A DNA stretch of 63,087 nucleotides, the filler included, from Octopus bimaculoides (Eukaryota), in the NCBI RefSeq assembly GCF_001194135.2. It is 7 parts of 7 records of this genome, joined end to end, with 100 filler letters (N's around TTAATTAATTAA, not from the genome) between each part and the next. Parts side by side here need not be neighbours in the genome. Positions count along the whole stretch, not along the records: positions 7,316 to 31,611 come from NC_068987.1; 6 more parts are not named here. One strand, 5' to 3'. Positions 7,643 to 31,992 of this stretch are shown here, in pieces; within the stretch, counting starts at the first letter, position 1; each line of letters starts with the position of its first letter. Position numbers and translations under genes: made by a program. The notes under the pieces are model-generated. The model saw only the letters and a list, made by a program, of their open reading frames with translations, had not been told where the DNA came from and ran no database searches.

Positions 7643-9078
7643 CATATACACACTCAACAGATTACACCTGGAAAAGAAAACAATCCTAACATCGGGCTAC
7701 AATAAGTTCCCTTAGATGCCAAGAACCTTCCTATCGGGCTACATCAAGTAACCTTAGATGCCAGGAACCATCTTAAGTATCCTAGCTGTCCCAAATAACA
7801 CTGTTTACTGTAGTTGTACTAAACTGGGTTTTGCGCCTATTTCCTCTTCCCATCTGTTCAGACCTTAAAGGATAGTTCCTAATGTACTTATAACAACTGG
7901 AATACATTTTACCAGCATTTTCCATACTCTCTGTAATTCCATAGTTAGGTCCTGGTACTTTGCTATTTTTCTATACTTCTCATATTAATTTTTTACATTA
8001 TTTGGTTTTGTAAAGTCAATTATCGGGCTTTCTATTCTCTTTATCTACCACTACCAAACCAGGCCTTCTACCTTCTAATACTCTATCAGTCTGACTGTTA
8101 GAGTCCCACAACATCTTGTACTTCTTACTTTCTAGTACTTTACTAGGTTCATGTTCATACCATTTATCAGTATGCTCAAATCCTAGCTTTCTACAAAGCT
8201 CCTAGTGGGTTGCTCTCTGTAGATAGTCATGTCTTCTCTTGTATTCTTTCTGTGCCAGCATGCTACATTCACTTACTATATGAGTAACACTTTCCTCGTT
8301 TGATTTGCATAATCTACATTGGAAATCTACTTGGCTTTTGTCTATTTTGGTCTTTATCCAATTAGTACTTAATTCCTGATCTTATGCAGCTACTAACAAA
8401 CTTTCTCTCTCCCTCTTCAGCTATCCCTTCTGCAGCCATAACCATGTCTCACTATTACTATTTGCTGAAACTACCTTTGGGAATCAACCATGCAACGCCT
8501 TCTCCTTCCAGTCAGATAACTCCTATTCTCTCTTCTGGTTTTTAAGATCGTTTGGTGTTTTAGTTTCCCTGTGTCTTTCTGTGACTCTAGCATCTTTTTT
8601 AAATAAACTTTCTTCACTATTACCTACAAAGGAGTGTATATCTACTCTAGCTAACTCCACGTAGTCTTCTACTGATATTAACACTTTCCACCTTCCATTC
8701 TAGGTAGCTATAATCTTGCTACTCCTGCCCTTGGGTAGAGTCCTCTATTCATATTGAATTCTTTCCTAGTTCTGTCTAGCTTTGCTAATTCAGTTTTTCC
8801 AATCTACAAAAGCTGCTGAGTATCTAAGTAATGATACTGTCCAAGTATTTTCAGCCTTCACTATATTCGGACCGTTTAGCTTTGACTTCATTAGCTTCCT
8901 CACCCTTCTGATGTACTCCTTCTCGATTTTTGCTTTCATTTCTGTAGTTAGTACTCTGTTAGATTCTAATTCTCCTATATAGTCATACCTCTCTCCTCCT
9001 TTCAATGATTTTAATGTCTGGCTATCTGGTAATTGGATACCTTCGCTGTTGACTACCTGTTCCCTTCTCATGACTAAC
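7643..9078 (-). mobile_element. R4/Dong-like retrotransposon 3' ~1.4 kb (RT thumb, CCHC knuckle, RLE), pseudogenised
   Basis: CAMLVMRR...EYIRRVRKLMKSKLNG...SLLRYSAAFVDW; CRLCKSNEESVTHIVSEC; YKRRHD; KWYEHEP; RRPGLVVVD; KYQDL; GTARILK. In-frame stops; ~42 bp tandem duplication near the 3' end. Confidence 0.92.
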
Positions 9079-9215
9079 ATTGCACACTGACAAGCAAATC
9101 TGTGGTATTGAGCAGAATATTTGCTGTAGCCCATCTTTTATATCAAGATAAAACATGTACTTGATGACACTTCCAATCAGTTAAGATCAGAAGCTATGAA
9201 ATAAAGCCTGGTTTT
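9078..9215 (-). repeat. 5' fragment of the ~530-nt AAT-tailed non-coding element
   Basis: Reverse complement (CTTCTGATCTTAACTGATTGGAAGTG...TATAAAAGATGGGCTACAGCAAATATTCTGCTCAATACCACAGA) matches 59925-60035. Confidence 0.85.
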
Positions 9216-10844: not shown

Positions 10845-11170
10845 AGCTTAAGTTGGCTGTATGGCATAATCGTTAGCACTTGGGTCGATGTAATCGACTT
10901 ACTCCTTCCTTGATATTACTGGACTTGTAACGAAATTTAAAATCTATGTTAGGCGGCAAGTTGTCAGAACCGTTGACACACCAGATAGAATGCTTAGTGA
11001 CATTTCGTCCGTCTTTGCGTTTTGAGTGCAAATTCTGTGAAGGTCACCTTAGTCTTTCAACCTATCGGATCGATAAAATATGTACAAGTTGATCACTGGA
11101 GTCGATGTAATCGGCTTACCCCATCTCCCGAAATTGCTGGCCTTGTGCCAAAATTTGGAACCAATATTAG
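10845..11170 (+). mobile_element. Two adjacent degenerate SINE family N copies (10845-10930, 10950-11170)
   Basis: Heads with GGC..AATCGTTAGCAC / GGCGGCAAGTTGTCAGAACCGTT, GTCGATGTAATCG, tail AAATTGCTGGCCTTGTGCCAAAATTTGGAACC. Confidence 0.8.
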
Positions 11171-11827
11171 GGAAGGTTTGCTTACAAGAAGTCCCGATAA
11201 TATCTAAAAGGGTCTTATGTCGTCAAATACTTTTTGGTAATCAATTCATGCCATATTTATGCTACTCTCTTGTTCACCTATAGTTACTCTTTACAACCAT
11301 GCATCATTTTATGATACTCCTTCTGCTCTCCAGCTATAATTCTAGTTATAAAAAGAATGTAAGATCATTGTATAGGTTTGGTATTAGTCTGTAGTTTAAG
11401 ATGTCTGGTGTTCTTTTTAGGATTCAATAGCTTTTTCGCCTCAAGAAGAAAGTCAGGTATTGATTCTAATCCACTTAATAATTCATAGAATTCAGCTGTC
11501 GCATTGTCATGAATACTGGCTGGATATTTATAACTAGAAACCATTCTCAAGGCAACCGTTGTTATAAAAATTATTTTTGTTTTAAATTTCATATGCTGGT
11601 TATCTTCATTTCCACACCTTTATATTTGAATAATTTCCCATATTCTAGTGATGTATCATCTATCCTTGACGACAACAATATATGAAAGGCTTTCTTTTTA
11701 TAGTGTATGTAATTTAATACTCTCATTTATAAAGAATAATACAAACCATAATGCGTTTGTTTAATTCCCTAATAATGGTTGTGCTGGTTGAATTTATGAA
11801 AAATATTATGCATTCTATTATTATTAT

Positions 11828-12508
11828 CACTTTATCACAGGTTTTGTTGGAGCTCTCGGAGTCTTGCATGCATAGCAGACTTACTACCTGCAGCCTACGG
11901 TATCATGCTATTCGCTTTTTTCAGTTATCTCATGCTTTCCTGGTTATTCTGGCCGTGCCAAGGAGGCAAATCTTTTATAACAGTTCTACTGGGCACTCTA
12001 TTCCAATTTCCTTTATATTTCTCCTGATGCCTTCTGATACTGTTCCCAAGGACCCAACAATAATTGGCAATTTCTTCACATTCTTCATTTTCCATAGCCG
12101 GGCTATTTCGTATTTAAGAGGGTTGTATCTGTCTTTTCGCCTTCCTTTTTGATTATTCGTGGGTCAAAGGGGCATGCACCTTGTCCACCACCACTAAGTC
12201 CGGTCTGTTATGTTCTAGCACCTTATCTGTTTGGATTGGGAAATCTCAGAGGATTTTTCTAGTCTCCGATTCGCTACTCTCTGCAGCTTGTACTCATACC
12301 ATGTCTTGCCTCTCTCTAGCCCCCACGTTTCGCAGTTTCCAATGTAACACTTTCGCTACCTGGTCGTGTCGCCACAACTTGTAGGGCATTCGTTCGTGAT
12401 ATGAGCAATGGTTTCATCCACTCTATTGCAGATGCAGCACAACAGAGACACTTGCTCATTCCTAAGCTTGACCCTCCAGTTCGTGACCAAAGCTTGGTCT
12501 TGCGCTGC

Positions 12509-12510
<2 letters not shown>
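11828..12510 (-). mobile_element. 5'-truncated R4/Dong-like element with (AAT)n on both sides
   Basis: AAQDQAL...CCICNRVDETIAHITNECP; RHDQVAKVLHWKL; DFPIQTDKVLEHNRPDLVVVD; KYNPLKYEIARLWKM...PIIVGSLG...CLLGTARI; (ATT)n at 11817-11827 and 12511-12645. Confidence 0.92.
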
Positions 12511-12645: not shown

Positions 12646-13271
12646 TGCGGGGGGTCGACTTTGCTTTTCTTCCTTTCGATAAATNNNNNNNNNNNNNNNN
12701 NNNNNNNNNNNNNNNNNNNNNNNNNNNNNNNNNNNNNNNNNNNNNNNNNNNNNNNNNNNNNNNNNNNNNNNNNNNNNNNNNNNNNNNNNNNNNNNNNNNN
12801 NNNNNNNNNNNNNNNNNNNNNNNNNNNNNNNNNNNNNNNNNNNNNNNNNNNNNNNNNNNNNNNNNNNNNNNNNNNNNNNNNNNNNNNNNNNNNNNNNNNN
12901 NNNNNNNNNNNNNNNNNNNNNNNNNNNNNNNNNNNNNNNNNNNNNNNNNNNNNNNNNNNNNNNNNNNNNNNNNNNNNNNNNNNNNNNNNNNNNNNNNNNN
13001 NNNNNNNNNNNNNNNNNNNNNNNNNNNNNNNNNNNNNNNNNNNNNNNNNNNNNNNNNNNNNNNNNNNNNNNNNNNNNNNNNNNNNNNNNNNNNNNNNNNN
13101 NNNNNNNNNNNNNNNNNNNNNNNNNNNNNNNNNNNNNNNNNNNNNNNNNNNNNNNNNNNNNNNNNNNNNNNNNNNNNNNNNNNNNNNNNNNNNNNNNNNN
13201 NNNNNNNNNNNNNNNNNNNNNNNNNNNNNNNNNCACCCCCACCTCCGTTCGATTTTCTGGTGATCGTTAGA

Positions 13272-13342
<71 letters not shown>

Positions 13343-14270
13343 AACCATAAAAAGTCAGGAGATTTAAATATGTTTATTTAACCACTTGACATCCTTAGGA
13401 TAATAACCGTTTCACAGCACGGAAGAAATTATGTTTACATGTTTGCATTAATATGAATGCTCGGCTTTATGCAATACAATTGCATATTCAAAAATCAATG
13501 CAAATATAGAAAGCTAGCTCGTAAAATTATCAGAATATCATGGTTACACCAACAATTCAACGATTCAACTCTATACGTACAAAATTTTCTCTTTATGTAT
13601 ACAATATATAGAAGACGGGACTAAACAAAAATTAGCTTGGTTTGGTCAATAAGAAATATAAGATATATTGATTTCATGCCAATTAAAGGAGTAGATAAAA
13701 ATTCAAGGAATTAACAACAATCAGGAAAGGATAAAAAGAGGAAGCAGGTAAACAAAATAAACAGTAAAAAGTATAAAAAAATATGTATAAAGATATATTA
13801 TAATGAATGACATGAGGGACAGAGCGCTGCAGATATAAAGATTAAACCAATAAATCGTAAATAATAACAAAAAACTTCAAATAGGCTTAAAAGACAAAAA
13901 GATCTCCACAAAAGAAAATGGGGCTTTAAATTAAAATCACATTCTTCGACCACACAACAAAATATTTTCTAACCTTACGAACTTTAGTAAAGCCAAAATC
14001 GTGCGCATATATATATANNNNNNNNNNNNNNNNNNNNNNNNNNNNNNNNNNNNNNNNNNNNNNNNNNNNNNNNNNNNNNNNNNNNNNNNNNNNNNNNNNN
14101 NNNNNNNNNNNNNNNNNNNNNNNNNNNNNNNNNNNNNNNNNNNNNNNNNNNNNNNNNNNNNNNNNNNNNNNNNNNNNNNNNNNNNNNNNNNNNNNNNNNN
14201 NNNNNNNNNNNNNNNNNNNNNNNNNNNNNNNNNNNACAGATGTATACAGCAAAACTATTTGGCGCAATGG

Positions 14271-14342: not shown

Positions 14343-15879
14343 TTTATATGTGCATATGTTTGTGTGTCTGTGTTTGTCTCCCAACATCGCTTGAAAATTG
14401 TGTGTGTGTGTGTGCTATATATATGTATATGATAAATTACCGGTGTTATGCGCTTACATACTTTAAGCTTTGAGAAGCTATAATTCATTAACTGAACACT
14501 ACAAAGCGATGATTAGAAAAGATCTGTGTACATTTATGTTTAGCTCATTCATATACACACAAATGTAGAAAGAACCCCGTTGTGGAACTATATCCGAAGA
14601 GAATCTCTGCTTTTAGACAATGTGTGTTAATTTCAGCTTGACAAAGCTTTGCACAAGCGAACAAATTTATTTATCGTTATTTACATATAACGAGTAATTT
14701 CTAGTGAAATATGAACGATAGATCCGTTGTCTGTAACTGATGAAGCACAAAGACGCAGAAAAACGTGCTTTGCAGTCTAATTACGCCATTCATATATCAG
14801 TTCAATGTGTTTTCAGAGTTAATGTCTATAAAGGTAATTTCTCTTTTATGATAATTACCGTAGCGAAGGTATTTCTACATTTGAGTGTACACAGACTTGT
14901 TGAATATAAATGTACACAGATTTATTGTAATCGTCGATGCTTAATGAGCATTCAATTAATTAATTTCATTTAGAAAAAGCTTGAACACTCTAGCAAATTT
15001 TGTTTTTGTTGATTACACCTGTAAGAACAACAGTTCTTCATGGATTTGGTATTTGAAACTGATGAAGCGTCACTATCCAGTAATACGTGTCTTATAGTCT
15101 GATGTCATCATTCATATCTATAAGGAGGATGTCTCTTTCGAGACAGTTACCATCTTTGAGTGTACACTTATTTTATTATCGGTGTTTAATATGTATTTAA
15201 TTACCTACGCTCTCTTACGCATGTCTATATATACACTAACACGTACATATATTGTCTAGTCTGTTTGTGCACATGGAACTACATTTTCTATAATTGAAGG
15301 CGGTACGGTGTAGGTTGAGGTAAAGTAGGCTGATGAATCTGACAGGTTTCATCTTTGAGCAGAGCACTCTCATTTTATATCGCACTCCGCCACCAAAAAT
15401 TAAAAAAAAATTGATATCATACTGTAGTCCTTAATAAGTCGTGTATATTATAGACGATATTGTTGAACATTGTTTCTGGCAAATCATTCGAGTTCATTCA
15501 GAGATAAAAATAAGATTCCAAACAAGTCTCAGTAAATTAATCTAGTCTATTAGGTGATTATCCAATCAAAACTTGAATTGAAGATGGTTCGCGTCTAACT
15601 TAACGAACAACTCTACATCTTACAACGCAGAGTAGATAAACGAAAAACTTTAAACAGTTAAATCGAAGGATATTAAAGTGAAGACCCTGAAGAAACAGCA
15701 CCGGTTGGGTAGCAATTGCAATGGTTACTAATCGGTACTGTTCAAACATCTGCAGGTCTATGAAAAGGTATACATATATATAAAGTATTAAAGGTAATAC
15801 TATGATATATCGTAATAATCCTTATATATATATATACACACACACATCAACTTTTAGAATCGTAGAATCTTTAGAATGT

Positions 15880-16600
15880 TGGGAAAACGCCTTGCAGTAC
15901 GTTTTCGGTTATTTACGTTCTGAGTTCAACTTTGCCTTTCATCTGTTCTATGTTGACAAAATAAAATACCAACTAAGTACAAGTGGCAGTGATATTGACT
16001 GTTCCTTTCTCCTTAAAATTGCTGGCCTTGTACCAAAATTTGAAACCACTTATAAGCCGGTGAGCTGGCAGAATCGTTAGTATGCAGCATTTCTTCCGGC
16101 TTTATGTTCTAAGTTCTAATTTTGCAGAGGTCTACTTTGCCCTTTATCCCTTCGAGGTCGATGTAATCGACTTCCCCGTCCCTAAAAAGAAAAACAAAAA
16201 ACTGATGGCTCAGTGCCAAAATCTGGAAAGCCATTATTATTATTAAAACAAGCAGGATAACAGAAAAATCTAAATGATTTGGCTCTTCAGCTCAAAAACC
16301 ACTGAATCTGGTCTCACCACCTGATGTAGTTTTTCTACAAAAAGTGCAAATTGTATACGGAATTGGCAAAGAAATATAAATCATATCAGTTTAAAATTTT
16401 GACACAAGGCCAGCAGGATCGGGAAGGGAATAAATCGATTACATAGACCTCAGTCTTCAACTGGTATATATATTATCGATCTTAAGAAGATGAAAGGTAA
16501 AGTCAACCTCGGCAGAATTTGAACTTAGAGCGTAAAGACGGACGAAATGCCTCAAGTATTGTACCCAGCGTGCTAACAATTCTACCAGCTTTCTGCCATA
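15880..16600. mobile_element. Cluster of three SINE family N copies (+ ~15880-16060, + ~16062-16250, - ~16395-16600)
   Basis: Diagnostic GTTCT.AGTTC.AA / GCC.TT.ATC / GGCCTTGT.CCAAAATTT segments in both orientations. Confidence 0.8.
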
Positions 16601-17354: not shown

Positions 17355-18090
17355 TAACAAATATTTTGACTTAGGCACAAGTCAGCAAATGTAAGAGCTG
17401 GGGATTAGTCTACCCTATCGACCCCAGTGCTTGAGTGGCATTTTATTTATTTGACTCTGGAGAGATGAAAGGTAAAGTTGACCTCTGTGGAATTTGAATT
17501 GAAAATGTTAAGAACAGGAACAAATAGCGCAAAGTATTTATTCCTGCGCTTTAGCGATGCAACATTAACGATTCAGATCATCGCCCTTTCACTAACATTA
17601 ATAGTTCTTTCTAATTTTGGCATAGGGCCTGCAATTATGTCGTGAATGGGTAAGTCGTCTACATCGACCTCAGTAACTGACTGGTACTTATTTTATGGAA
17701 CCCTCTTCCCCCAAGAAAAGATGAAAGCAAAGTCGACTCCGGCAGAATTTGATCTCAGAACTTAAGCAATAAGAAATGCAACTAAGCTGTTTGTTCGACG
17801 GGCTAACGATTTTGCCAGTTTCACGTCTTAAACACTAACATTAATAATTTCAAATTTTAGCAGAAAGCCAGCAATTTTGACCAATTACATCAATCCCATT
17901 GCTCAACTGGTAATTATTTAATTGACCCCAGTGCTCAACTGGTACTTATTTGACCCCAAAAGGATGAAAGCCAGAGTTGACTTCGGCAGAATTTGAACTC
18001 AAAGTGTAATGTATCGGAAGAAATGCCGCGAAGCATCATGTTCGGAGTGCAGACGATTCTGTCAGATCACCGGACTGACACTAACATCGC
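17355..18090 (-). mobile_element. Head-to-tail array of three SINE family N copies
   Basis: Three minus-strand copies (~17370-17585, 17615-17825, 17850-18075), each bordered by CACTAACAT(TAATA). Confidence 0.85.
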
Positions 18091-18586: not shown

Positions 18587-19167
18587 CTATTGATTCAGAC
18601 AGCTCTATAACCAATTAATTCACACTATAAGTGTACTGTGTGTTGACTCAAGTGGCACATCCACAACTATTGACCCAGAAAACATTTCTACAACCTATTG
18701 ACTCAGAAAACATCTTTTCAACCTGTTAACTCGGATAATAGCTCCACAAACTATTGACTCGGGTAACAATTCTACAACATATTGACTCAGATAACACATC
18801 TAGAACTTATTGATTCAGGCAACATCTTTATGCTCTGTTGACTGAGACTACGGCTTTTAAAAGGTACTGATTCAGGAAATATGTCTACAACCTATCAACT
18901 CTGACAACACCTCTACAATTTATTGGCTGAGACAACAATTCTACAACCTATTGACTCAAACATCTCTATAACCTGTTGATTCAGACAATAGCTTCATAAA
19001 GTACTGATTCAGGGAACATCTCTACACCTATAATCTCAGACAACAGCTCTATAATTTATTGGCTGAGGCAACAATTCTACAACCTATTGGCTCAGGCAGC
19101 AACTTTACAAAGTATTGAATCAGATAACAACTCTATGGTTTATTGGCGCAGGCAGCAGCTCTACAAC
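18587..19167. repeat. Degenerate 28-bp minisatellite (~20 units) with ~137-bp higher-order repeat
   Basis: Consensus approx. CTATTGACTCAGACAACANCTCTACAAC; units counted by hand are mostly exactly 28 nt. Confidence 0.92.
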
Positions 19168-20286: not shown

Positions 20287-20493
20287 AGGCGGCGAGCTGG
20301 CAGAATCGTTAGCACGCCTGTCGAAATGCTTAGTACCATTTCGTTCGTCTTCATGTTCTGAGTTCAAATTCCGTCAAGGTCGATTTTATCTTTCATCCAC
20401 TCAGGATCGATAAAAGGAGCACAGGGGTCGATGTAATCGTCTTACTCCCTACCCCCAAATTGCTGGCCTTGTGCCAAAATTTTAAACCAATAT
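20287..20493 (+). mobile_element. SINE family N, full length
   Basis: GGCGGCGAGCTGGCAGAATCGTTAGCACGCC...AAATTGCTGGCCTTGTGCCAAAATTTTAAACC. Confidence 0.92.
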
Positions 20494-21632
20494 GATAAAA
20501 TGCTTGCAAATCGAGAAGAGAGTGGAGTAAGTGATGTGACCGCAGAATACTGAAAACAGAAGTTCCACTGGGATGAATAACAAGGCTCACAGACAACAAG
20601 TAGACATGTGCGGTCGTCGAGTGTTATCCGAGAGATCGGATGTGATCATTCAGAAAACTTCTAAGGCAATGGGAAAACGACACAGTGAAACAAACTGAAC
20701 TCAAATTGAAGAGGAAGGGGTAATTAAAGGAAGAATGACTGTGCATTATCACAACAACAAAACAATGCCAACGATAATATCAAAAAATATTAGACCTAGA
20801 AATGTGAAAAAATAAACAAATCCGAATATATACGACCTCTACGCTGTGGTAAGTAGTCACCCATATCAAACTAGTAACCGGAAATTGATTACTCTGGATT
20901 AATATTACGCGTATGTACGTTAAAGATGAGATGAGATGTTGAATTGTGTTAGTAAAGGGGAAAGAAGTGAAAGAAGTGAAAATTGTTCCAGAAACACTGA
21001 TCTAAATAAGCCGTGTGACAACATGATTACACTGCTGCATCGAATATGTGTCTCCAATGATTAATTTCAAAACAGGCCAAAAGAGACGACCTAAATGTCA
21101 AGGATTGAAAGAATATGGTAATAGTCAGCATTATTGCGTGATACAGGAACTCCTGGAAAATCTTTACTTTTAGAAATTGATAAGAATGAAGGTGAATGTT
21201 CGCAGATATGCAAAGAGGTAATTAGTTCTCTAATAATCGTCAGATTATTTATACATTAGTTGAGTCATTTGCACATATGACAGCTTTCACACGCTATTGA
21301 CAACTTAAATTCTCCGTAATTAATAATATCATAACGTGACGAATAATTTACATTATAAAGTTTGCACGTTTACGCGCACGTGTACATTTGTATATGTGTA
21401 TTTATAAGATAGTTTAAATTTACTTCGTGGTTTATACCTAATTAATTGTTAAAATTCACATACAATTTAAAGTTATATAAAGAAATGATTTAAATAATTG
21501 CAAGTTATTCTCACACTCACAAATACATAGATGTGTGCGTATGTATGAATATATGTATGTGTGCGAGTTTGTATGTATATGTCTGTTATATACTGAGAGC
21601 TTTTCCTCACGTATGTCAATAGAGAATACACA

Positions 21633-25392: not shown

Positions 25393-26663
25393 ATTCTTTA
25401 GTTGGCGAAGTGAATGATATAACTAAGACATTATTAGTCATAAGCACGTTAGTCTATATAATATACATATAATATCGGTCAAATGGCTAGCTAGACAAAA
25501 GATTACTCAGTGAAACAAACACGTACATACATGCAAACAGTATGGTTAATAATAGAATTAATGACACTTTCGTAAATTAATTATATATATATATAATTAT
25601 ATATATATATATATATATATATTAAATATATATTTTTTTAACCAAAAAATTTGGTAAAAAATATAGTATCTGTTAACAATCTTAGCAGAAAACTCACAGT
25701 TAAAAGTTAAGAACCGGATTCTTTAGTTGGCGAAGTGAATGATATAACTNNNNNNNNNNNNNNNNNNNNNNNNNNNNNNNNNNNNNNNNNNNNNNNNNNN
25801 NNNNNNNNNNNNNNNNNNNNNNNNNNNNNNNNNNNNNNNNNNNNNNNNNNNNNNNNNNNNNNNNNNNNNNNNNNNNNNNNNNNNNNNNNNNNNNNNNNNN
25901 NNNNNNNNNNNNNNNNNNNNNNNNNNNNNNNNNNNNNNNNNNNNNNNNNNNNNNNNNNNNNNNNNNNNNNNNNNNNNNNNNNNNNNNNNNNNNNNNNNNN
26001 NNNNNNNNNNNNNNNNNNNNNNNNNNNNNNNNNNNNNNNNNNNNNNNNNNNNNNNNNNNNNNNNNNTATATATATATATATATATATATATGAATATATA
26101 CATCTATACATCGATTCTTTCTTGTCTTGGAATTCACGGTCAAACGGCTAGGTAGAATTGCATGAAAAATTACGCAGATGTATAGAATGATCCAGTGGTG
26201 ATGCTGGGCTTTGTATTTTTTTCATAGCTTTCATGGTTTCCGAGATAATCTACTATTACAATACTCTTGTGTTTATGAACGAGAAAGGATGGGGTGATAG
26301 ATGAATAAAGAAGGAAAGGGTGATGTCATACTTGGTAGTGTGAAGATGAAAATTGTACGCTGAAAAAAATAAAGCAAACAGCGTTTCAACTGTATGAATA
26401 TATGTATGTGTATGTAAGAGGGAGGTATGTGAATGTGTGTGTGTGTATTTGTGTGTTTGTGCGTGTACGCGCGCAATGGAAGTCGGATGGTTCATCTTTG
26501 TTCGCTTAGTATTTGGTTGGATATTGGTTGTTTTGTTTTGTTGGTAGTTATTTTTAGCGTTTTGACAGAAAAAAGTCATTCTAAAATTGTGTTTTAACGT
26601 AAGCGTGCCCAAACAAGTCGAATACTTATGCAGAGCAGGTTTTACAGTCACATCATCCAAACC

Positions 26664-26691
26664 GACCGGGTAAAACCGGGCTTAGCTGCTA

Positions 26692-26692
<1 letters not shown>
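26664..26692 (+). mobile_element. Possible Helitron 3' terminus
   Basis: CCGG-GTAAAA-CCGG hairpin, 9 nt spacer, then CTAG followed by T; no 5' end or helicase seen. Confidence 0.4.
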
Positions 26693-26725
<33 letters not shown>

Positions 26726-27264
26726 NNNNNNNNNNNNNNNNNNNNNNNNNNNNNNNNNNNNNNNNNNNNNNNNNNNNNNNNNNNNNNNNNNNNNNNNNNN
26801 NNNNNNNNNNNNNNNNNNNNNNNNNNNNNNNNNNNNNNNNNNNNNNNNNNNNNNNNNNNNNNNNNNNNNNNNNNNNNNNNNNNNNNNNNNNNNNNNNNNN
26901 NNNNNNNNNNNNNNNNNNNNNNNNNNNNNNNNNNNNNNNNNNNNNNNNNNNNNNNNNNNNNNNNNNNNNNNNNNNNNNNNNNNNNNNNNNNNNNNNNNNN
27001 NNNNNNNNNNNNNNNNNNNNNNNNNNNNNNNNNNNNNNNNNNNNNNNNNNNNNNNNNNNNNNNNNNNNNNNNNNNNNNNNNNNNNNNNNNNNNNNNNNNN
27101 NNNNNNNNNNNNNNNNNNNNNNNNNNNNNNNNNNNNNNNNNNNNNNNNNNNNNNNNNNNNNNNNNNNNNNNNNNNNNNNNNNNNNNNNNNNNNNNNNNNN
27201 NNNNNNNNNNNNNNNNNNNNNNNNNNNNNNNNNNNNNNNNNNNNNNNNNNNATATATATACATG

Positions 27265-27305
<41 letters not shown>

Positions 27306-27726
27306 ACATATACATACAATTAAGGATAAAATAAAACAAATTTAAAGGCCGATGTATATATTCATTCAATCCATGTTAACGAAATTCTCTATGGTATACC
27401 AAGTACATACATCGATGCATTCATCTATATGATATATAAAATAGATTTCCAAGAATTTTATAATTTAATAAAAATCGAATTATTTAACCCATCATTTCTT
27501 TTTAAATTTTAACCTTGTGATTCTATTAACTCTGATGAGAGAAACCTAGAGTATTGCTATGGTTGAAGTTAGTTCACCCATGGCAATCTATATCTTTTCG
27601 AAACGGCCGTAGGACATTATATATAGACTTTACACATGTTCCAGATTCTCTATGAATCATTTTACATCTGCTTTATCATCTTCTTTCGAGCTTCGCAAGT
27701 ATATTTATGGACTTACACTTTTTATA

Positions 27727-27800
<74 letters not shown>

Positions 27801-27836
27801 GCTCTCTCTCTCTCCCTATATATATATATATATATA

Positions 27837-27990
27837 GTTGAAATTTATAGAAAAACAAAAGACGAAGACAGGTGTATGAACAACAAGCAGGTGTATTAGT
27901 TTGACGCTCGGGAAAATGAAAAAGTCTTTTACGTTTTGAGCCTAGGCTCTTCAATAGAAAGCAATAAGAGAAAATAAACAGAGAGAGAGA
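27837..27990 (-). mobile_element. Probable Penelope-like terminal repeat fragment with a degenerate hammerhead-like motif
   Basis: Minus strand CTTT-CTATTGA-A-GAGCCTAGGCTC-AAAA-CGT-A-AAAG (27926-27961). The family call is inference. Confidence 0.4.
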
Positions 27991-28055
27991 ATAAAAAAAG
28001 CTTGTGGATTTGGCGGTCAAATATAATATATATATATATATATATNNNNNNNNNN

Positions 28056-28109
<54 letters not shown>

Positions 28110-28819
28110 CTTACACACGTATACATGAATAAATACATACGCATATATACACAAATGGGCATATACTTAATATACTCAATATATGTAGTTAGAAATAAAT
28201 AGATACAGATAAATGTTGACGCTACCATTGTCCTTTTTAAAATTTTTGTCGAATTATTTCTGAAGAAGAGAGAATTCTCCATATGTTGTCGCTATAATAA
28301 ACTGCAGAATCAACAAAGCAAGAGTATTACATTAGTATAAATGCATTGGTGTGCAAGAAGTGAATGTATCTCTAAAAGTTGTATAACTTGTTTCAAAATT
28401 ATGATTAAATAGAAAATTTCATCTAGTTTTTCTTTGTTTGCTGTATATTCATCCAAGCATTAGGTAAAACAGTGGAAGATGAATTTTACAAAAATAGAAG
28501 CTGAAACTACGAAGGCTTCACCGTTAGTGATTTCATTATATTCATGCCAATGTAAAACTCTTGCGCAATTGCTCAACCCGATAAAAACAGTTTTTAGATC
28601 TCTCTCAAATAACACACTGCAGTGTAGACACTGTGGAGTTTTGGATAGCACACTGTAAACAGACACAGTGGAGTTTGAAATATACAAAAAATTATAGGAA
28701 AGTATTTGACCGTAGGTTTAGGCCAGCTTAATTAAGGAAGTACTGGGGTGAAATAAATATGTTGTATTAGCTGATATGAATGAAAAAGCATGTTTCGAAT
28801 TTTCAGTTTAGGAACTAAT

Positions 28820-29790
28820 ATAAGCAAAAATGCTAGTTCTGAAATCTCTCTAAGAAATAAACGCAATAGTTGTACTAACAAGTAAAGTTCGTAGCCTCTT
28901 CAACATGGATGTCCGTTCGAACGGACTTTATTGCGATTTTTTAACCCCAAGAGGATATCTCCTCTAGCTGGTTAACGATGCATAGCTGCATCGGAGATAT
29001 TGCGAGCAGGTGAGCGAATCCCTACTCCCTTCTAGCGATGAGACCAACAGACCATCCTGGTTTCGGACTATTTCTGCCTCTCTTCAGTACTGGACACCTC
29101 GTCTGTTAGAGATGGCAGTAGCTCGCTTCTGCTTGCAACATATATATAATTTCAAACGACATTCAGTCGTTAATTTTGCAACAAGTAAAAATGCTAGTTC
29201 TTAGAACTCTTAAAGAGATCAGCGTAGTAGTTGTACTAACATGTAATGTTCGTAGCCGCTTTAACATGGCTGTCCGTTCGTACGGACTTTACTGCGATTC
29301 TTTAACCCCCAAGAAGACATCTACTCTAACTGGCTAACGATGCACAGCTGCATCCGAGATATTGTGAGTAGGGGAGCGAACCCCTACCATCTTCTAGCGA
29401 CGGGATTGCAGTAAAGTCCGTTCGAACGGATAGCCACGTTGAAGTGACAACGAACACTACTTGTTAGTACAATTACTGCGTTGATCTTTTAGAGAGATAT
29501 CAGAACTAGCATTTTTGCTTGCCTCAAAATCAGCGACTGTATCGCTTGATATTATATATATTGCGAGCAAAGGCGAGCTACTGCCATCTCTAGCAGACTG
29601 AAGAGAGGCAGAATTAGACCAGTACTGAAGGGAGGCAGAAATAACCCAAAACCAAGCTGAGCTGTTGGTCCCGTCGCTAGAAGGTGGTAAGGATTCGCTT
29701 TCCTGCTCGCAGTATCTCAGATGTAGCTTTGTATCGTTAGCCAGCTAGAGGAGATGTCCTCTTGGGGTTAATGATTCGCAGTAAACGCTA
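28820..29790. repeat. 361-bp monomer repeat: 1.6 direct copies plus one inverted, circularly permuted copy
   Basis: TGCTAGTTC at 28831 and 29192, GTCCGTTCG at 28911 and 29272 (period 361); 29406-29786 is the reverse complement of one full period. Confidence 0.93.
29044..29093 (-). ncRNA. Candidate type I hammerhead ribozyme
   Basis: CCAGUA CUGAAGA G(A)GGC-AGAAAUA-GUCC GAAA CCA-GGA-UGG UC/UGUUGG. All core nucleotides present; stems I (6 bp, two G-U), II (4 bp with a bulged A) and III (4 bp) can pair. Folded by hand only. Confidence 0.6.
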
Positions 29791-30337
29791 ATATAGTTTT
29801 TTCATTATTTTCTATATAGGCAATCAGTATTTGAAAAATACTGTAGTAAACAGTAGGCAGTAGACGGCAGCAGAGCTAGTACTATGTTAGAAAAGGAGTC
29901 CCAACTATACCACCATACTGAACAACCTATTTTTGACGAAGAAAATGCTAAGGCTTCTTGTTAGCGTGCTTTCCAATTGATCAAAATTGACATCAGTGTG
30001 TAAGCCAAGCAGACAAAGCAAAATAGAAGAGATTTTCTGTTGCGAAGTGAAGCCATATTGAAATTTGGCCAAGTGGCAAAAAGTTACTGGCATGTTGAAT
30101 AGTAAATTAATTATTTGAGAGTATGAAAAAAATGTAGTGATGGCGCCTGTCTTCTTTTTATTTGTTTTTTTTCTGTATATCTTGAATGGTATAAATAAAT
30201 TTGCATCTTTTAATTCTTCTTGTCTGTTCAACATTATTTATTGGTACAAAGTGACATTAATTTCACAATGTTTCTTGCTATGAGTTGTCTATCGTCGTAT
30301 GATATATAGAAATCATGGAATAATTTCAGTGTCTTAA

Positions 30338-30381
<44 letters not shown>

Positions 30382-30399
30382 NNNNNNNNNNACACACAC

Positions 30400-30431
<32 letters not shown>

Positions 30432-30569
30432 TGATGTTAATTTTCACTCTATTACAATTAACTTTAACACGAACGATTATATATATAAATATATATTTTA
30501 ACAATAACGTATTTAAAAGTAGACGATTCTAACTTTTAAGGGAAGAGTAAGTCCATATCAACAATCTCA

Positions 30570-30705
30570 TCACTTGTCAAATACTTTATCTTATCGACCC
30601 TGGAGGAATGAAAGGTAAAGTTGACCTCGGCAATATTTGAATTCAGAATGTAAAGCATCGTAAGAAATATCACAAAACATCTTTCAGACACTTCGACAAT
30701 TCTTA
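30570..30705 (-). mobile_element. SINE family N fragment
   Basis: TTATCGACCC...ATGAAAGGTAAAGTTGACCTCGG...TTTGAA.TCAGAA.GTAAAG. Confidence 0.8.
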
Positions 30706-31992
30706 TGATATTCAGAAAAATATAGAACCCAATAACTTTATGTTATATTTTCAATACCATCTCAAATTGGTCATAATACGCAAATTGCGTTCGATTGCCC
30801 GCTGAATGCTATTTTATTGTTAATGCATCCTGAAGTGGACAAGGACTAATTCCTTCTCAGTATACCAAGTTTGATAAAATGTGTATTGCCTACCATCCTT
30901 TCAGGAAAAATCGAATAGGTATTAGAGTAAAATATCATAGAGTAGAAAATAACTATACAAAATTTATTTTATTACATTACTGTACAAGCATACATTGGGG
31001 AGGCGTAAAAAGAGTTTTCTGAGAGGCACAAACTGAAAATAGGTGTCATTTCTCCATGAACGTGATTTCAGTTTATTGATACTGCTAAAACAAAATTGTA
31101 GGCACCAAACCACTTCCTCCTAAAACTATATTAGATCTTCCTCCTCTAGATTCAACCTTTTTTTATTATTATCTCCCTTTCTTTCGACCTCTTTTTTCCC
31201 CAACCATCCGCCATGCTGGACCGCTGAAATCTGCAAGTTTTTTTTCTTTCCCTATTTTGTATACTTATTGTTTTCTTCTGTTGTATATAGCCCTAAGGCT
31301 TCGCGACTGTTATATATGTATAATTCTTTATTGTATTTTTATAATGTCTTGTGTGTTTCTGTCCAATTATACATTCGCTAGCTTTTTCCCAGAGCTTAGT
31401 AAGAGCACTGACGCCTCCAGAATTAAATGGTCTCAATGTTAATTGGCGCGAAATTACTATGATATTTTGAGTTATTCACTGACAAAGGAAAATCAGCTGC
31501 GAATATTCCGTGTATCATGTCTGTACCTAAATTTCCTGTCCGTAAAGGTTTCGTCTAACTTTTTCTCCTCGTTGCCTTCTTTCTGTTCAACATACATACA
31601 TACATACATATNNNNNNNNNNNNNNNNNNNNNNNNNNNNNNNNNNNNNNNNNNNNTTAATTAATTAANNNNNNNNNNNNNNNNNNNNNNNNNNNNNNNNN
31701 NNNNNNNNNNNTATATATTTATATTTATATATTTATATATTTGATCCTTTATATTGAACACTCAATATTTCATCTACATTCAATACTTTCTTTCATGGTG
31801 CCATCCATTTTTATTTTATTTTATTTTATATTGTATATTGTATATTCCATATTCTATACCCCACATTAGTTCTGCAGGAATATAAATAAAACATAAAAAA
31901 CAGACAGTGTTGGAACTCTTTTAAGCAAAATAATATATTCCTCTATACACAATCATACAAAAAAACCCACCTTTTTTGTATTTATTTTTACT

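What the first reader, a model, noticed from the sequence alone, without database searches (positions are those of the whole stretch)
28820..29790. Candidate cephalopod retrozyme: 361-bp repeat monomer carrying a type I hammerhead ribozyme
Seen: period 361 bp. Minus strand 29093>29044 reads CCAGUA CUGAAGA GAGGCAGAAAUAGUCC GAAA CCA GGA UGG UC/UGUUGG, with the full core (CUGANGA, GAAA, GUC), closed stems II and III and an open stem I. Predicted cut is between 29050 and 29049. In the inverted copy (29617-29670) stem I extends to 8 bp (GACCAGUA/UGUUGGUC) and keeps the same two G-U pairs, which only pair on this strand; that copy's core is mutated. The monomer has further hairpins (GTCCGTTCGAACGGAC, GATGCA-N4-TGCATC, GAGGA-N4-TCCTC) and no ORF. 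Established: metazoan non-LTR retrozymes (newt satellite 2, mussel, coral) are ~150-400 nt tandem monomers with type I hammerheads that yield circular RNAs. Inference: this is such a family; I do not know of a description in octopus. Weak point: stem II needs a bulged A and I folded it by hand.
Basis: partly seen in the sequence, partly recalled or inferred. Interest (0 to 1): 0.88.

Follow-up and report, generated by a model that had tools for sequence, protein, structure and literature searches.

The report
Decayed hammerhead-bearing retrozyme-like insertion
This is one old, mutated insertion of a small non-coding mobile element of about 361 bases that carries a hammerhead self-cleaving RNA motif; it is a further example of a kind already known in animals, and this copy can probably no longer make RNA circles.

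Summary
A 361-nt unit is present as 1.62 direct units (28822-29405) abutting 1.05 inverted units (29405-29785). On the minus strand, 29093->29044 carries a complete type I hammerhead: core CUGAAGA/GAAA/UC, helices of 6, 4 (plus a bulged A) and 4 bp, with the cut between 29050 and 29049.

The motif is unlikely to be chance. It appeared in 0 of 2000 shuffles at the observed stringency. A covariance model built only from four experimentally validated retrozyme hammerheads ranks it first in the piece (16.7 bits, rough E 0.0055).

It is still weak. It scores 13 bits against an Rfam threshold of 52, and its hammerhead fold is the least stable of those compared.

The composite is flanked by a 7-bp duplication (CTAATAT). 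The three copies differ from one another about equally. The layout is a 5'-truncated partial tandem with an inverted copy at its 5' end, which is the published signature of Penelope-like-element integration.

Best reading (confidence about 0.68): a dead offspring copy of a non-autonomous, PLE-mobilised non-LTR retrozyme. Only one hammerhead is intact, so this locus cannot release a unit-length RNA.

I could not obtain other genomic copies, so family consensus, covariation and the cephalopod origin remain untested. It is a new member of a known kind, of modest interest.

The parts
28815..28821 (.). Left target-site duplication CTAATAT
   Evidence: Identical 7-mer directly abutting the left end of the repeat and 2 nt from the right end. 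Chance frequency at random position pairs in this piece is 0.0014.
28822..29182 (-). Copy A: one full 361-nt unit (sense strand = minus), the only one with an intact hammerhead
   Evidence: blastn and the repeat finder; alignment A1.
29044..29093 (-). Type I hammerhead motif: helix I CCAGUA/UGUUGG (6 bp, 2 G-U); CUGAAGA; helix II G[A]GGC/GUCC with loop AGAAAUA; GAAA; helix III ACCA/UGGU with loop GGA; C17
   Evidence: Sequence. Descriptor: 1 hit against 0 in 2000 shuffles. Rfam Hammerhead_HH9 13.1 bits, below the threshold of 52. Custom model R1 16.7 bits, E 0.0055, top hit, no non-canonical pair. Best control score 11.7 bits in 41 kb.
29049..29050 (-). Predicted self-cleavage site (after C at 29050, before U at 29049)
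   Evidence: Position of C17 in the motif. Not tested experimentally.
28911..28926 (.). 16-nt perfect palindrome GTCCGTTCGAACGGAC (hairpin); also at 29272-29287 (1 mismatch) and 29416-29431
28951..28964 (.). Hairpin GAGGA-N4-TCCTC
   Evidence: helix 5.
28977..28992 (.). Hairpin GATGCA-N4-TGCATC. In copy C both C's are U on the sense strand, giving G-U pairs.
   Evidence: helix 3.
29183..29405 (-). Copy B: 223-nt 5'-truncated unit, head-to-tail with A. Its sense 5' end lies 6 nt downstream of the predicted cleavage position, and it has no hammerhead.
29405..29785 (+). Copy C: 1.05 units in inverted orientation (sense strand = plus). It spans a unit junction and starts and ends at the same unit position (TTGCAGTAAA / TCGCAGTAAA).
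   Evidence: Inverted repeats I1-I5; blastn; alignment.
29617..29670 (+). Degenerate hammerhead of copy C (CUGAAGG, AAAA, helix III and GUC lost; helix I 8 bp)
   Evidence: It differs from A at 8 of 50 positions, the same rate as the rest of the unit.
29597..29621 (+). Partial local duplication of the 5' half of the ribozyme (ACUGAAGAGAGGCAGAAUUAGACCA). It supports CUGAAGA-GAGGC, including the bulged A, as ancestral.
   Evidence: Direct repeat D4; alignment A1 columns 199-220.
29788..29794 (.). Right target-site duplication CTAATAT, preceded by 2 extra bases CG at 29786-29787

Best explanation
The 964-bp block 28822-29785 is a single, old retrotransposition product of a small (about 361 nt), non-coding, hammerhead-bearing element. 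That is a non-LTR retrozyme, meaning a non-autonomous element copied by the reverse transcriptase and GIY-YIG endonuclease of a Penelope-like element (PLE).

Inferred life cycle of the family (inferred, not shown here): a master array is transcribed. The type I hammerhead cuts each unit after GUC. The 361-nt RNA is ligated into a highly base-paired circle. A PLE enzyme then copies circular or multimeric RNA at a staggered chromosomal nick.

Shown here: both sense 3' ends face outward to a 7-bp target duplication, and the 5' ends meet head-to-head at about 29405. One arm is a 5'-truncated partial tandem (B+A, 1.62 units) and the other an inverted 1.05-unit copy (C). The three copies have since each drifted about 6-8% from their common ancestor. 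This left one intact ribozyme (A), killed another (C) and never included a third (B). The locus itself is therefore a dead copy: a transcript of it could be cut at most once and could not release a unit-length RNA.
For: Hammerhead: all core bases and three helices are present in copy A. The descriptor gives 1 hit against 0 in 2000 shuffles. Model R1, built only from the coral, mussel and two axolotl ribozymes shown to cleave (PMC7229834 Suppl. Table 2; alignment A2), puts it first in 24.3 kb at 16.7 bits, E 0.0055, with every pair canonical. The best score in 41 kb of control animal-like DNA is 11.7 bits. The Rfam HH9 match has E 9.3 over 4227 families, about 0.002 for that family alone in the 1.2 kb searched. 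Helix lengths 6 and 4 equal the canonical metazoan type I architecture. An unpaired base at the 5' side of helix II is described as usual for PLE hammerheads (PMC4209133), and the bulged A is present in all three copies of that segment. The mussel ribozyme also has two G-U pairs in helix I.

Retroelement: the TSD CTAATAT has chance frequency 0.0014. Pairwise identities are about equal at 84-86%, with 13, 17 and 14 private changes, as expected for one event followed by independent decay. The partial tandem, 5' truncation, inverted copy abutting the 5' end and variable TSD are the published PLE insertion hallmarks (PMC8557442).

Unit properties: 361 nt, 42.7% GC, circular fold z = -3.8, no ORF with homologues. 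The sense strand folds 3-15 kcal/mol better than the antisense strand in all three copies.

Link to PLEs: the retrozyme-pLTR relationship is reported in 10.64898/2026.07.22.740005.
Against: Nothing passes an Rfam gathering score. The HH9 score is 13.1 against 52. The nearest-neighbour energy of the hammerhead fold is only -1.6 kcal/mol, against an alternative fold of -10.2. That is the weakest of the five ribozymes compared, although the validated ones are also 2.3-7.4 kcal/mol above their minimum free energy. Only one intact motif exists here. A and C differ in the ribozyme at the same rate as elsewhere (8 of 50), so nothing shows selection on it. Covariation in the body is not above shuffles (116 of 500). 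No other copy of the family, no partner PLE and no RNA evidence could be obtained. The E-value of R1 is rough and the model has only four sequences.
Confidence: 0.68

Rival explanations
1. Chance hammerhead look-alike inside an unrelated short tandem/inverted repeat (a minor satellite or an uncharacterised non-ribozyme retroposon). The element may still be mobile, but the RNA never self-cleaves.
For: Sub-threshold Rfam score. The hammerhead fold is thermodynamically disfavoured by 8.6 kcal/mol. Only one of the two ribozyme-region copies has the core. The first-stage reader may have screened very many windows, which inflates the number of chance finds. A relaxed descriptor hits 0.3-1.6% of 22.7-kb shuffles, which means hundreds to thousands of hits per Gb-sized genome.
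Against: At the observed stringency there were 0 hits in 2000 shuffles. The motif is the top hit of an independent model in the piece and scores above everything in 41 kb of control DNA. It lies inside the only retroelement-like tandem unit of the right size in the piece, about 1 kb of 24 kb. Its helix architecture and bulged base match published metazoan and PLE hammerheads. Mutation destroys such motifs rather than creating them, so an intact motif in a copy about 7% decayed implies an ancestor at least as good.
Confidence: 0.17
2. A fragment of an autonomous Penelope-like element: pseudo-LTR sequences left after internal deletion or assembly collapse, rather than a distinct short non-autonomous family.
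For: PLE pLTRs carry type I hammerheads, and PLE insertions have exactly this tandem/inverted layout. The assembly is a gapped draft in which such structures are often mis-assembled (PMC8557442).
Against: The head-to-tail junction of the 361-nt unit is seen twice independently, at B/A (29182/29183) and inside C (around 29520/29521). The repeating unit is therefore 361 nt, not about 3 kb. No RT or GIY-YIG-like reading frame is seen in or near the block. The only RT fragments in the piece are LINE-like and 20 kb away. There are no N gaps inside 28822-29785. If retrozymes derive from pLTRs, the distinction is partly semantic.
Confidence: 0.1
3. A foldback or MITE-type DNA transposon, or a local inversion-duplication of satellite DNA.
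For: Large inverted arms (167, 157 and 116 nt at 78-86%) and a short flanking duplication.
Against: The two termini are not inverted copies of each other. The left end is unit position 1 (AAGCAAAAATG) and the right end is unit position about 106 (…CGCAGTAAA), so there are no terminal inverted repeats. Each arm is a circular permutation of the same tandem unit, as expected from copying a multimeric or circular template.
Confidence: 0.03

Closest known systems
Metazoan non-LTR retrozymes (Cervera & de la Pena 2020, PMC7229834), e.g. Mytilus Mg353, Acropora Amil224, axolotl Rtz331/353, newt satellite 2
   Same: Unit size (150-450 nt; here 361), GC below 45%, non-coding, tandem head-to-tail units, type I hammerhead with a 6-bp helix I and 4-bp helix II, predicted strongly self-paired circle, and a TSD longer than 4 bp. 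Like the mussel ribozyme, helix I has two G-U pairs and no obvious canonical loop1-loop2 motif.
   Different: There are no two consecutive intact ribozymes at this locus. Helix II has a bulged A. Helix III is longer (4 bp, 3-nt non-palindromic loop) than the 1-2 bp palindromic helix III typical of animals. There is no sequence similarity to the published units. RNA circles and cleavage are untested, and copy number is unknown.
Hammerheads in pseudo-LTRs of Penelope-like elements, and the PLE insertion architecture (Cervera & de la Pena 2014, PMC4209133; Craig et al. 2021, PMC8557442)
   Same: Unpaired base at the 5' side of helix II; a partial tandem with 5' truncation; an inverted 5'-truncated copy abutting the 5' end; a variable-length TSD.
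   Different: No RT/GIY-YIG ORF. The unit is 361 nt rather than about 3 kb. Helix III is stable enough for a monomeric ribozyme, whereas PLE min-HHRs lack helix III and act as dimers. No 30-40-bp tail is seen, only 2 extra bases.
Schistosoma Sm-alpha and related SINE-like hammerhead retroposons
   Same: A short (about 335 nt) non-coding dispersed or tandem element with a type I hammerhead. From memory, loop 2 of the Schistosoma ribozyme (CAAAUA) resembles AGAAAUA here; this is a lead, not a test.
   Different: No tRNA-like head or pol III A/B boxes were found (ARAGORN; pattern scan).
Plant LTR retrozymes (PMC4918200)
   Same: Non-autonomous retroelements whose hammerheads excise a unit that circularises.
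   Different: The plant elements have type III hammerheads, LTRs, PBS/PPT, 4-bp TSDs, GC above 55% and Gypsy-type mobilisation. None of these is present here.

Membership tests
Hammerhead ribozyme, type I (Rfam clan CL00010) | Conserved core CUGANGA ... GAAA ... UH with a G10.1-C11.1 pair | tested here: met
   Copy A has CUGAAGA, G..C, GAAA and U-C. The core is not met in copy C and is absent from B.
Hammerhead ribozyme, type I (Rfam clan CL00010) | Three helices around the core, with helix I open (type I topology) | tested here: met
   Helices are 6 bp, 4 bp with one bulged A, and 4 bp. The R1 alignment shows no non-canonical pair.
Hammerhead ribozyme, type I (Rfam clan CL00010) | Score at or above the curated Rfam gathering threshold | tested here: not met
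   No hit at gathering thresholds. The best match is Hammerhead_HH9 at 13.1 bits against 52.
Hammerhead ribozyme, type I (Rfam clan CL00010) | Resemblance to experimentally cleaving animal retrozyme hammerheads beyond the local background | tested here: met
   R1 gives 16.7 bits, E 0.0055 (rough), rank 1 of 24.3 kb. The control maximum is 11.7 bits in 41 kb.
Hammerhead ribozyme, type I (Rfam clan CL00010) | Helices supported by covariation across copies | tested here: inconclusive
   Only two copies of the ribozyme region exist and one is decayed. No further copies could be retrieved.
Hammerhead ribozyme, type I (Rfam clan CL00010) | Mg2+-dependent self-cleavage 3' of H17 | not testable with these tools
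   Needs in vitro transcription. In silico, the hammerhead fold is -1.6 kcal/mol against a minimum free energy of -10.2.
Metazoan non-LTR retrozyme | Non-coding unit of 150-450 nt in head-to-tail tandem, GC below 45-50%, no LTR/PBS/PPT | tested here: met
   361 nt, 42.7% GC, two independent unit junctions, no ORF with homologues.
Metazoan non-LTR retrozyme | [quoted passage not shown] 2026) | tested here: not met
   There is one intact motif (A). B is truncated before it and C's core is mutated.
Metazoan non-LTR retrozyme | Unit RNA predicted to be highly self-paired | tested here: met
   Circular minimum free energy -107.9 kcal/mol, z = -3.8, 61% paired. The antisense strand is also structured (z = -4.3), so this feature is not specific.
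Metazoan non-LTR retrozyme | Expressed as unit-length linear and circular RNA; multicopy family in the genome | not testable with these tools
   No transcriptome or source genome was available. The window's genome is not in the collections searched.
Penelope-like-element type insertion | 5'-truncated partial tandem plus an inverted 5'-truncated copy abutting the 5' end, with a variable-length TSD | tested here: met
   B+A tandem, C inverted at the 5' junction around 29405, and a 7-bp TSD with p about 0.0014. Definition taken from PMC8557442.
Penelope-like-element type insertion | Encodes RT and GIY-YIG endonuclease (autonomous PLE) | tested here: not met
   No such frame was seen by eye in the six-frame translations of 25800-31611 or among the ORFs of the piece; no profile-HMM scan was run. 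The element would have to be mobilised in trans.

The most novel reading that the evidence does not exclude
The source genome, said to be a cephalopod, harbours a still-active and so far undescribed retrozyme family of about 361 nt. Its hammerhead combines a PLE-style bulged helix II with a long, monomer-competent helix III. It produces abundant small circular RNAs, and its insertions carry the full Penelope-type tandem/inverted signature. That would be direct genomic evidence, outside vertebrates, that retrozymes are mobilised by PLE enzymes.
Probability: 0.35. Interest if true: 0.5.

Novelty: new member of a known kind. Interest (0 to 1): 0.35.

Why it matters
Hammerhead-bearing tandem repeats (non-LTR retrozymes) are already known from cnidarians to amphibians, including molluscs, so another family is expected rather than surprising. 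I found no paper that describes one in cephalopods.

The useful point of this locus is architectural. A short non-coding hammerhead unit sits in a TSD-flanked partial tandem with an inverted 5' copy. That is the integration scar of Penelope-like elements. It supports, from the insertion site itself, the recent phylogeny-based proposal that animal retrozymes are PLE-dependent.

If the family is active, it would also be a source of abundant small circular RNAs in an animal group noted for unusual RNA biology. Nothing here shows activity.

Tried and rejected
- **More copies by DNA pattern:** two metagenome scans and one viral scan with conserved 22-26-nt patterns gave 0 hits.
- **More copies through spurious ORFs:** the 64-aa ORF of the repeat has no relatives. 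The flanking 109-aa ORF is not on record.
- **Sampling the same genome through a LINE RT fragment:** it only reached ENA eukaryote-like contigs at 47-58% identity. Two 20-kb loci (L001, L002) lack the repeat. I used them only as negative controls. This also left the taxon unverified.
- **Literature search for the sequences themselves:** only coincidental mouse microRNA matches turned up.
- **TRF:** it does not call the 361-nt period because there are fewer than 2 units at 85% identity.
- **SINE-like pol III element:** no tRNA was found and there are no convincing A/B boxes. Rejected.
- **TIR, MITE or foldback element:** rejected because the termini are not inverted copies of each other.
- **Covariation in the non-ribozyme body with three copies:** not above shuffles, 116 of 500.
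- **Thermodynamic argument against the ribozyme:** weakened after calibration, because validated retrozyme hammerheads are also not the nearest-neighbour minimum free energy fold.
- **5' end of copy B:** it lies 6 nt from the predicted cut, which happens by chance about 7% of the time across two arms. I treat it as a hint only.
- **Other ribozyme classes on either strand:** none in Rfam at E <= 10.

Full report
**Observation.**
- Region 28822-29785 contains one 361-nt unit in three copies:
  - A, 28822-29182, full length.
  - B, 29183-29405, the first 223 nt on the plus strand, 84% identical to A.
  - C, 29405-29785, in inverted orientation, 1.05 units, 85-86% identical to A.
- TRF reports nothing because there are fewer than two direct units.
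- On the minus strand, 29093->29044 reads CCAGUA-CUGAAGA-GAGGCAGAAAUAGUCC-GAAA-CCAGGAUGG-UC-UGUUGG. That is every conserved hammerhead core base, a 6-bp helix I with two G-U pairs, a 4-bp helix II with one bulged A, and a 4-bp helix III. C17 is at 29050.
- Copy C keeps helix I (8 bp), but its core is dead: CUGAAGG, AAAA, helix III and GUC lost.
- C also carries a 25-nt partial duplication of the ribozyme's 5' half at 29597-29621.
- Copy B stops 6 nt downstream of the predicted cut, so it has no ribozyme.

**Is the motif more than chance?**
- Rfam finds nothing at curated thresholds.
- In a permissive search of 1.2 kb, the only ribozyme match is Hammerhead_HH9 at 13.1 bits against a threshold of 52. 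The E-value is 9.3 over 4227 families, about 0.002 for that family alone.
- My explicit type I descriptor finds exactly this site in the 24.3-kb piece. It finds none in 2000 dinucleotide shuffles at the observed helix lengths, and hits in 0.3-1.6% of shuffles when relaxed.
- As a test independent of the candidate, I built a covariance model (R1) from the four retrozyme hammerheads shown to cleave by Cervera & de la Pena (coral, mussel, two axolotl).
  - R1 ranks the candidate first in the piece at 16.7 bits, rough E 0.0055.
  - All pairs are canonical and the bulged A is treated as an insertion.
  - In 41 kb of compositionally similar control DNA, the best score is 11.7 bits, from a gutted alignment.
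- Nearest-neighbour energies argue for a weak ribozyme. The hammerhead fold is -1.6 kcal/mol against an alternative of -10.2.
- The validated ribozymes are also 2.3-7.4 kcal/mol above their own minimum free energy, so this does not disqualify the candidate.
- The 6/4 helix architecture is the canonical metazoan one. An unpaired base at the 5' side of helix II is described as usual in PLE hammerheads.
- That bulged A is present in all three copies of the segment.

**What the locus is.**
- The sense (ribozyme) strand is minus for A and B and plus for C.
- Both sense 3' ends face outward and the 5' ends meet at about 29405.
- The block is flanked by CTAATAT at 28815-28821 and 29788-29794, with two extra bases on the right. 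A match of this kind occurs at 0.14% of random position pairs in this piece.
- The three copies are about equally distant from each other (84-86%), with 13, 17 and 14 private changes. This star pattern fits one insertion followed by about 6-8% independent decay per copy.
- The termini are different positions of the unit, not inverted copies of each other. That excludes a TIR or foldback transposon.
- The unit junction is seen twice independently, so the repeating unit really is 361 nt.
- The layout is a 5'-truncated partial tandem, an inverted 5'-truncated copy abutting the 5' end, and a TSD of variable length. This is what Craig et al. describe for Penelope-like-element insertions.
- No RT/GIY-YIG frame is seen in or near the block, so the element is non-autonomous.

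**RNA properties.**
- The cleavage-to-cleavage unit is 361 nt and 42.7% GC. It folds as a circle at -107.9 kcal/mol (z = -3.8); the antisense strand has z = -4.3.
- In all three copies the sense strand folds 3-15 kcal/mol better than the antisense strand, because several stem differences are G-U on the sense strand. This is a mild hint of which strand matters.
- With three sequences, covariation is not above shuffles (116 of 500).
- A and C differ in the ribozyme at the same rate as elsewhere (8 of 50). This is expected for dead copies and gives no evidence of selection.

**Limits.**
- I could not obtain any other copy of the family.
- The window's genome is not represented in the protein collection. 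A LINE RT fragment from the window only reaches ENA eukaryote-like contigs at 47-58% identity.
- The consensus and covariation test, the search for a partner PLE, and the cephalopod assignment therefore remain open.

**Mechanism.**
- Inferred for the family: transcription of a master array, hammerhead cleavage after GUC, ligation to a 361-nt circle, and target-primed reverse transcription by a PLE enzyme on circular or multimeric RNA. This follows Cervera & de la Pena 2020 and Li et al. 2026.
- Shown for this locus: only the integration scar and one intact ribozyme motif.
- The locus fails the two-consecutive-ribozymes criterion for an active retrozyme. It should be regarded as a dead offspring copy.

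**Comparison and verdict.**
- It works like, and most probably is, a non-LTR retrozyme, equivalently a PLE-dependent non-autonomous element.
- Membership in the hammerhead family is met on core, topology and similarity to validated examples. It is not met on the Rfam threshold, and it is untested for cleavage and covariation.
- I found no description of cephalopod retrozymes. The family is widespread in animals, including molluscs, so this is a new member of a known kind.
- Confidence in the best explanation is about 0.68, and interest is about 0.35.

Noticed in passing
window 14600-15260 (motifs at 14731-14775 and 15058-15092, + strand): A second, much more decayed hammerhead-like repeat of a different family. 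CUGUAA-CUGAUGA-AGCACAAAGACGCA-GAAA-AACGUGCUU-UGCAG is the second-best R1 hit (14.4 bits, E 0.029, several non-canonical pairs). It sits in a weak direct repeat of about 330 nt (14627-14852 against 14960-15179, 61% identity, E 1.7e-11). The second unit keeps AACUGAUGAAGC...ACGUG but has lost GAAA, and the motif region is the best-conserved part of the two units. Rfam shows no hammerhead hit there. Inverted arms 14481-14571 and 14872-14962 flank it. This may be an ancient retrozyme or PLE relic, or it may be chance.
   Followed up: partly
window 29405 (B/C junction), relative to the predicted cut at 29049/29050: The sense 5' end of the tandem arm (copy B) begins UCCCGUCGC..., 6 nt downstream of the position equivalent to the hammerhead cut. 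This is what a cDNA copied from a self-cleaved RNA, trimmed at the junction, would look like. By chance it is expected about 7% of the time across the two arms.
   Followed up: partly
window 29405-29414 and 29776-29785: The inverted arm C begins and ends at the same unit position (TTGCAGTAAA / TCGCAGTAAA), so it is one unit plus about 10 nt of terminal redundancy. This is compatible with one turn around a circular template.
   Followed up: no
window 28986-29201 (+) and 29460-29744 (-): The antisense strand of the unit stays free of stop codons for 72 aa (copy A) and 95 aa (copy C) in the homologous frame. The 64-aa ORF has no homologue in the protein collection. This is probably chance.
   Followed up: partly
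window 16469-16537, 17442-17533, 17941-18032, 30585-30676; also 11091-11181 and 20417-20507: Dispersed SINE-like repeats at 68-81% identity (core ...GATGAAAGGTAAAGTTGACCTCGGCAGAATTTGAAC...). ARAGORN calls no tRNA. One copy lies 800 bp from the retrozyme-like block.
   Followed up: no
window 8019-9137, minus strand; 12319-12510, minus strand: LINE-type reverse-transcriptase C-terminal fragments. The best relatives are unnamed ENA proteins at 47-58% identity on contigs of 0.7-5.6 Mb with 34% GC and prokaryote-style gene calls. The window's own species appears to be absent from that collection.
   Followed up: partly
window 18663-19135: A 28-nt minisatellite with about 17 copies at 65% matches. 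It translates to a repetitive ORF.
   Followed up: no
window 12680-13240, 14000-14230, 25750-26060, 26725-27250, 28046-28055: Runs of N next to microsatellites ((AC)n, (TA)n, (ATT)n, (TATC)n), typical of a gapped short-read draft assembly. The inverted-repeat pairs reported around 25750-27047 are N-against-N artefacts.
   Followed up: no
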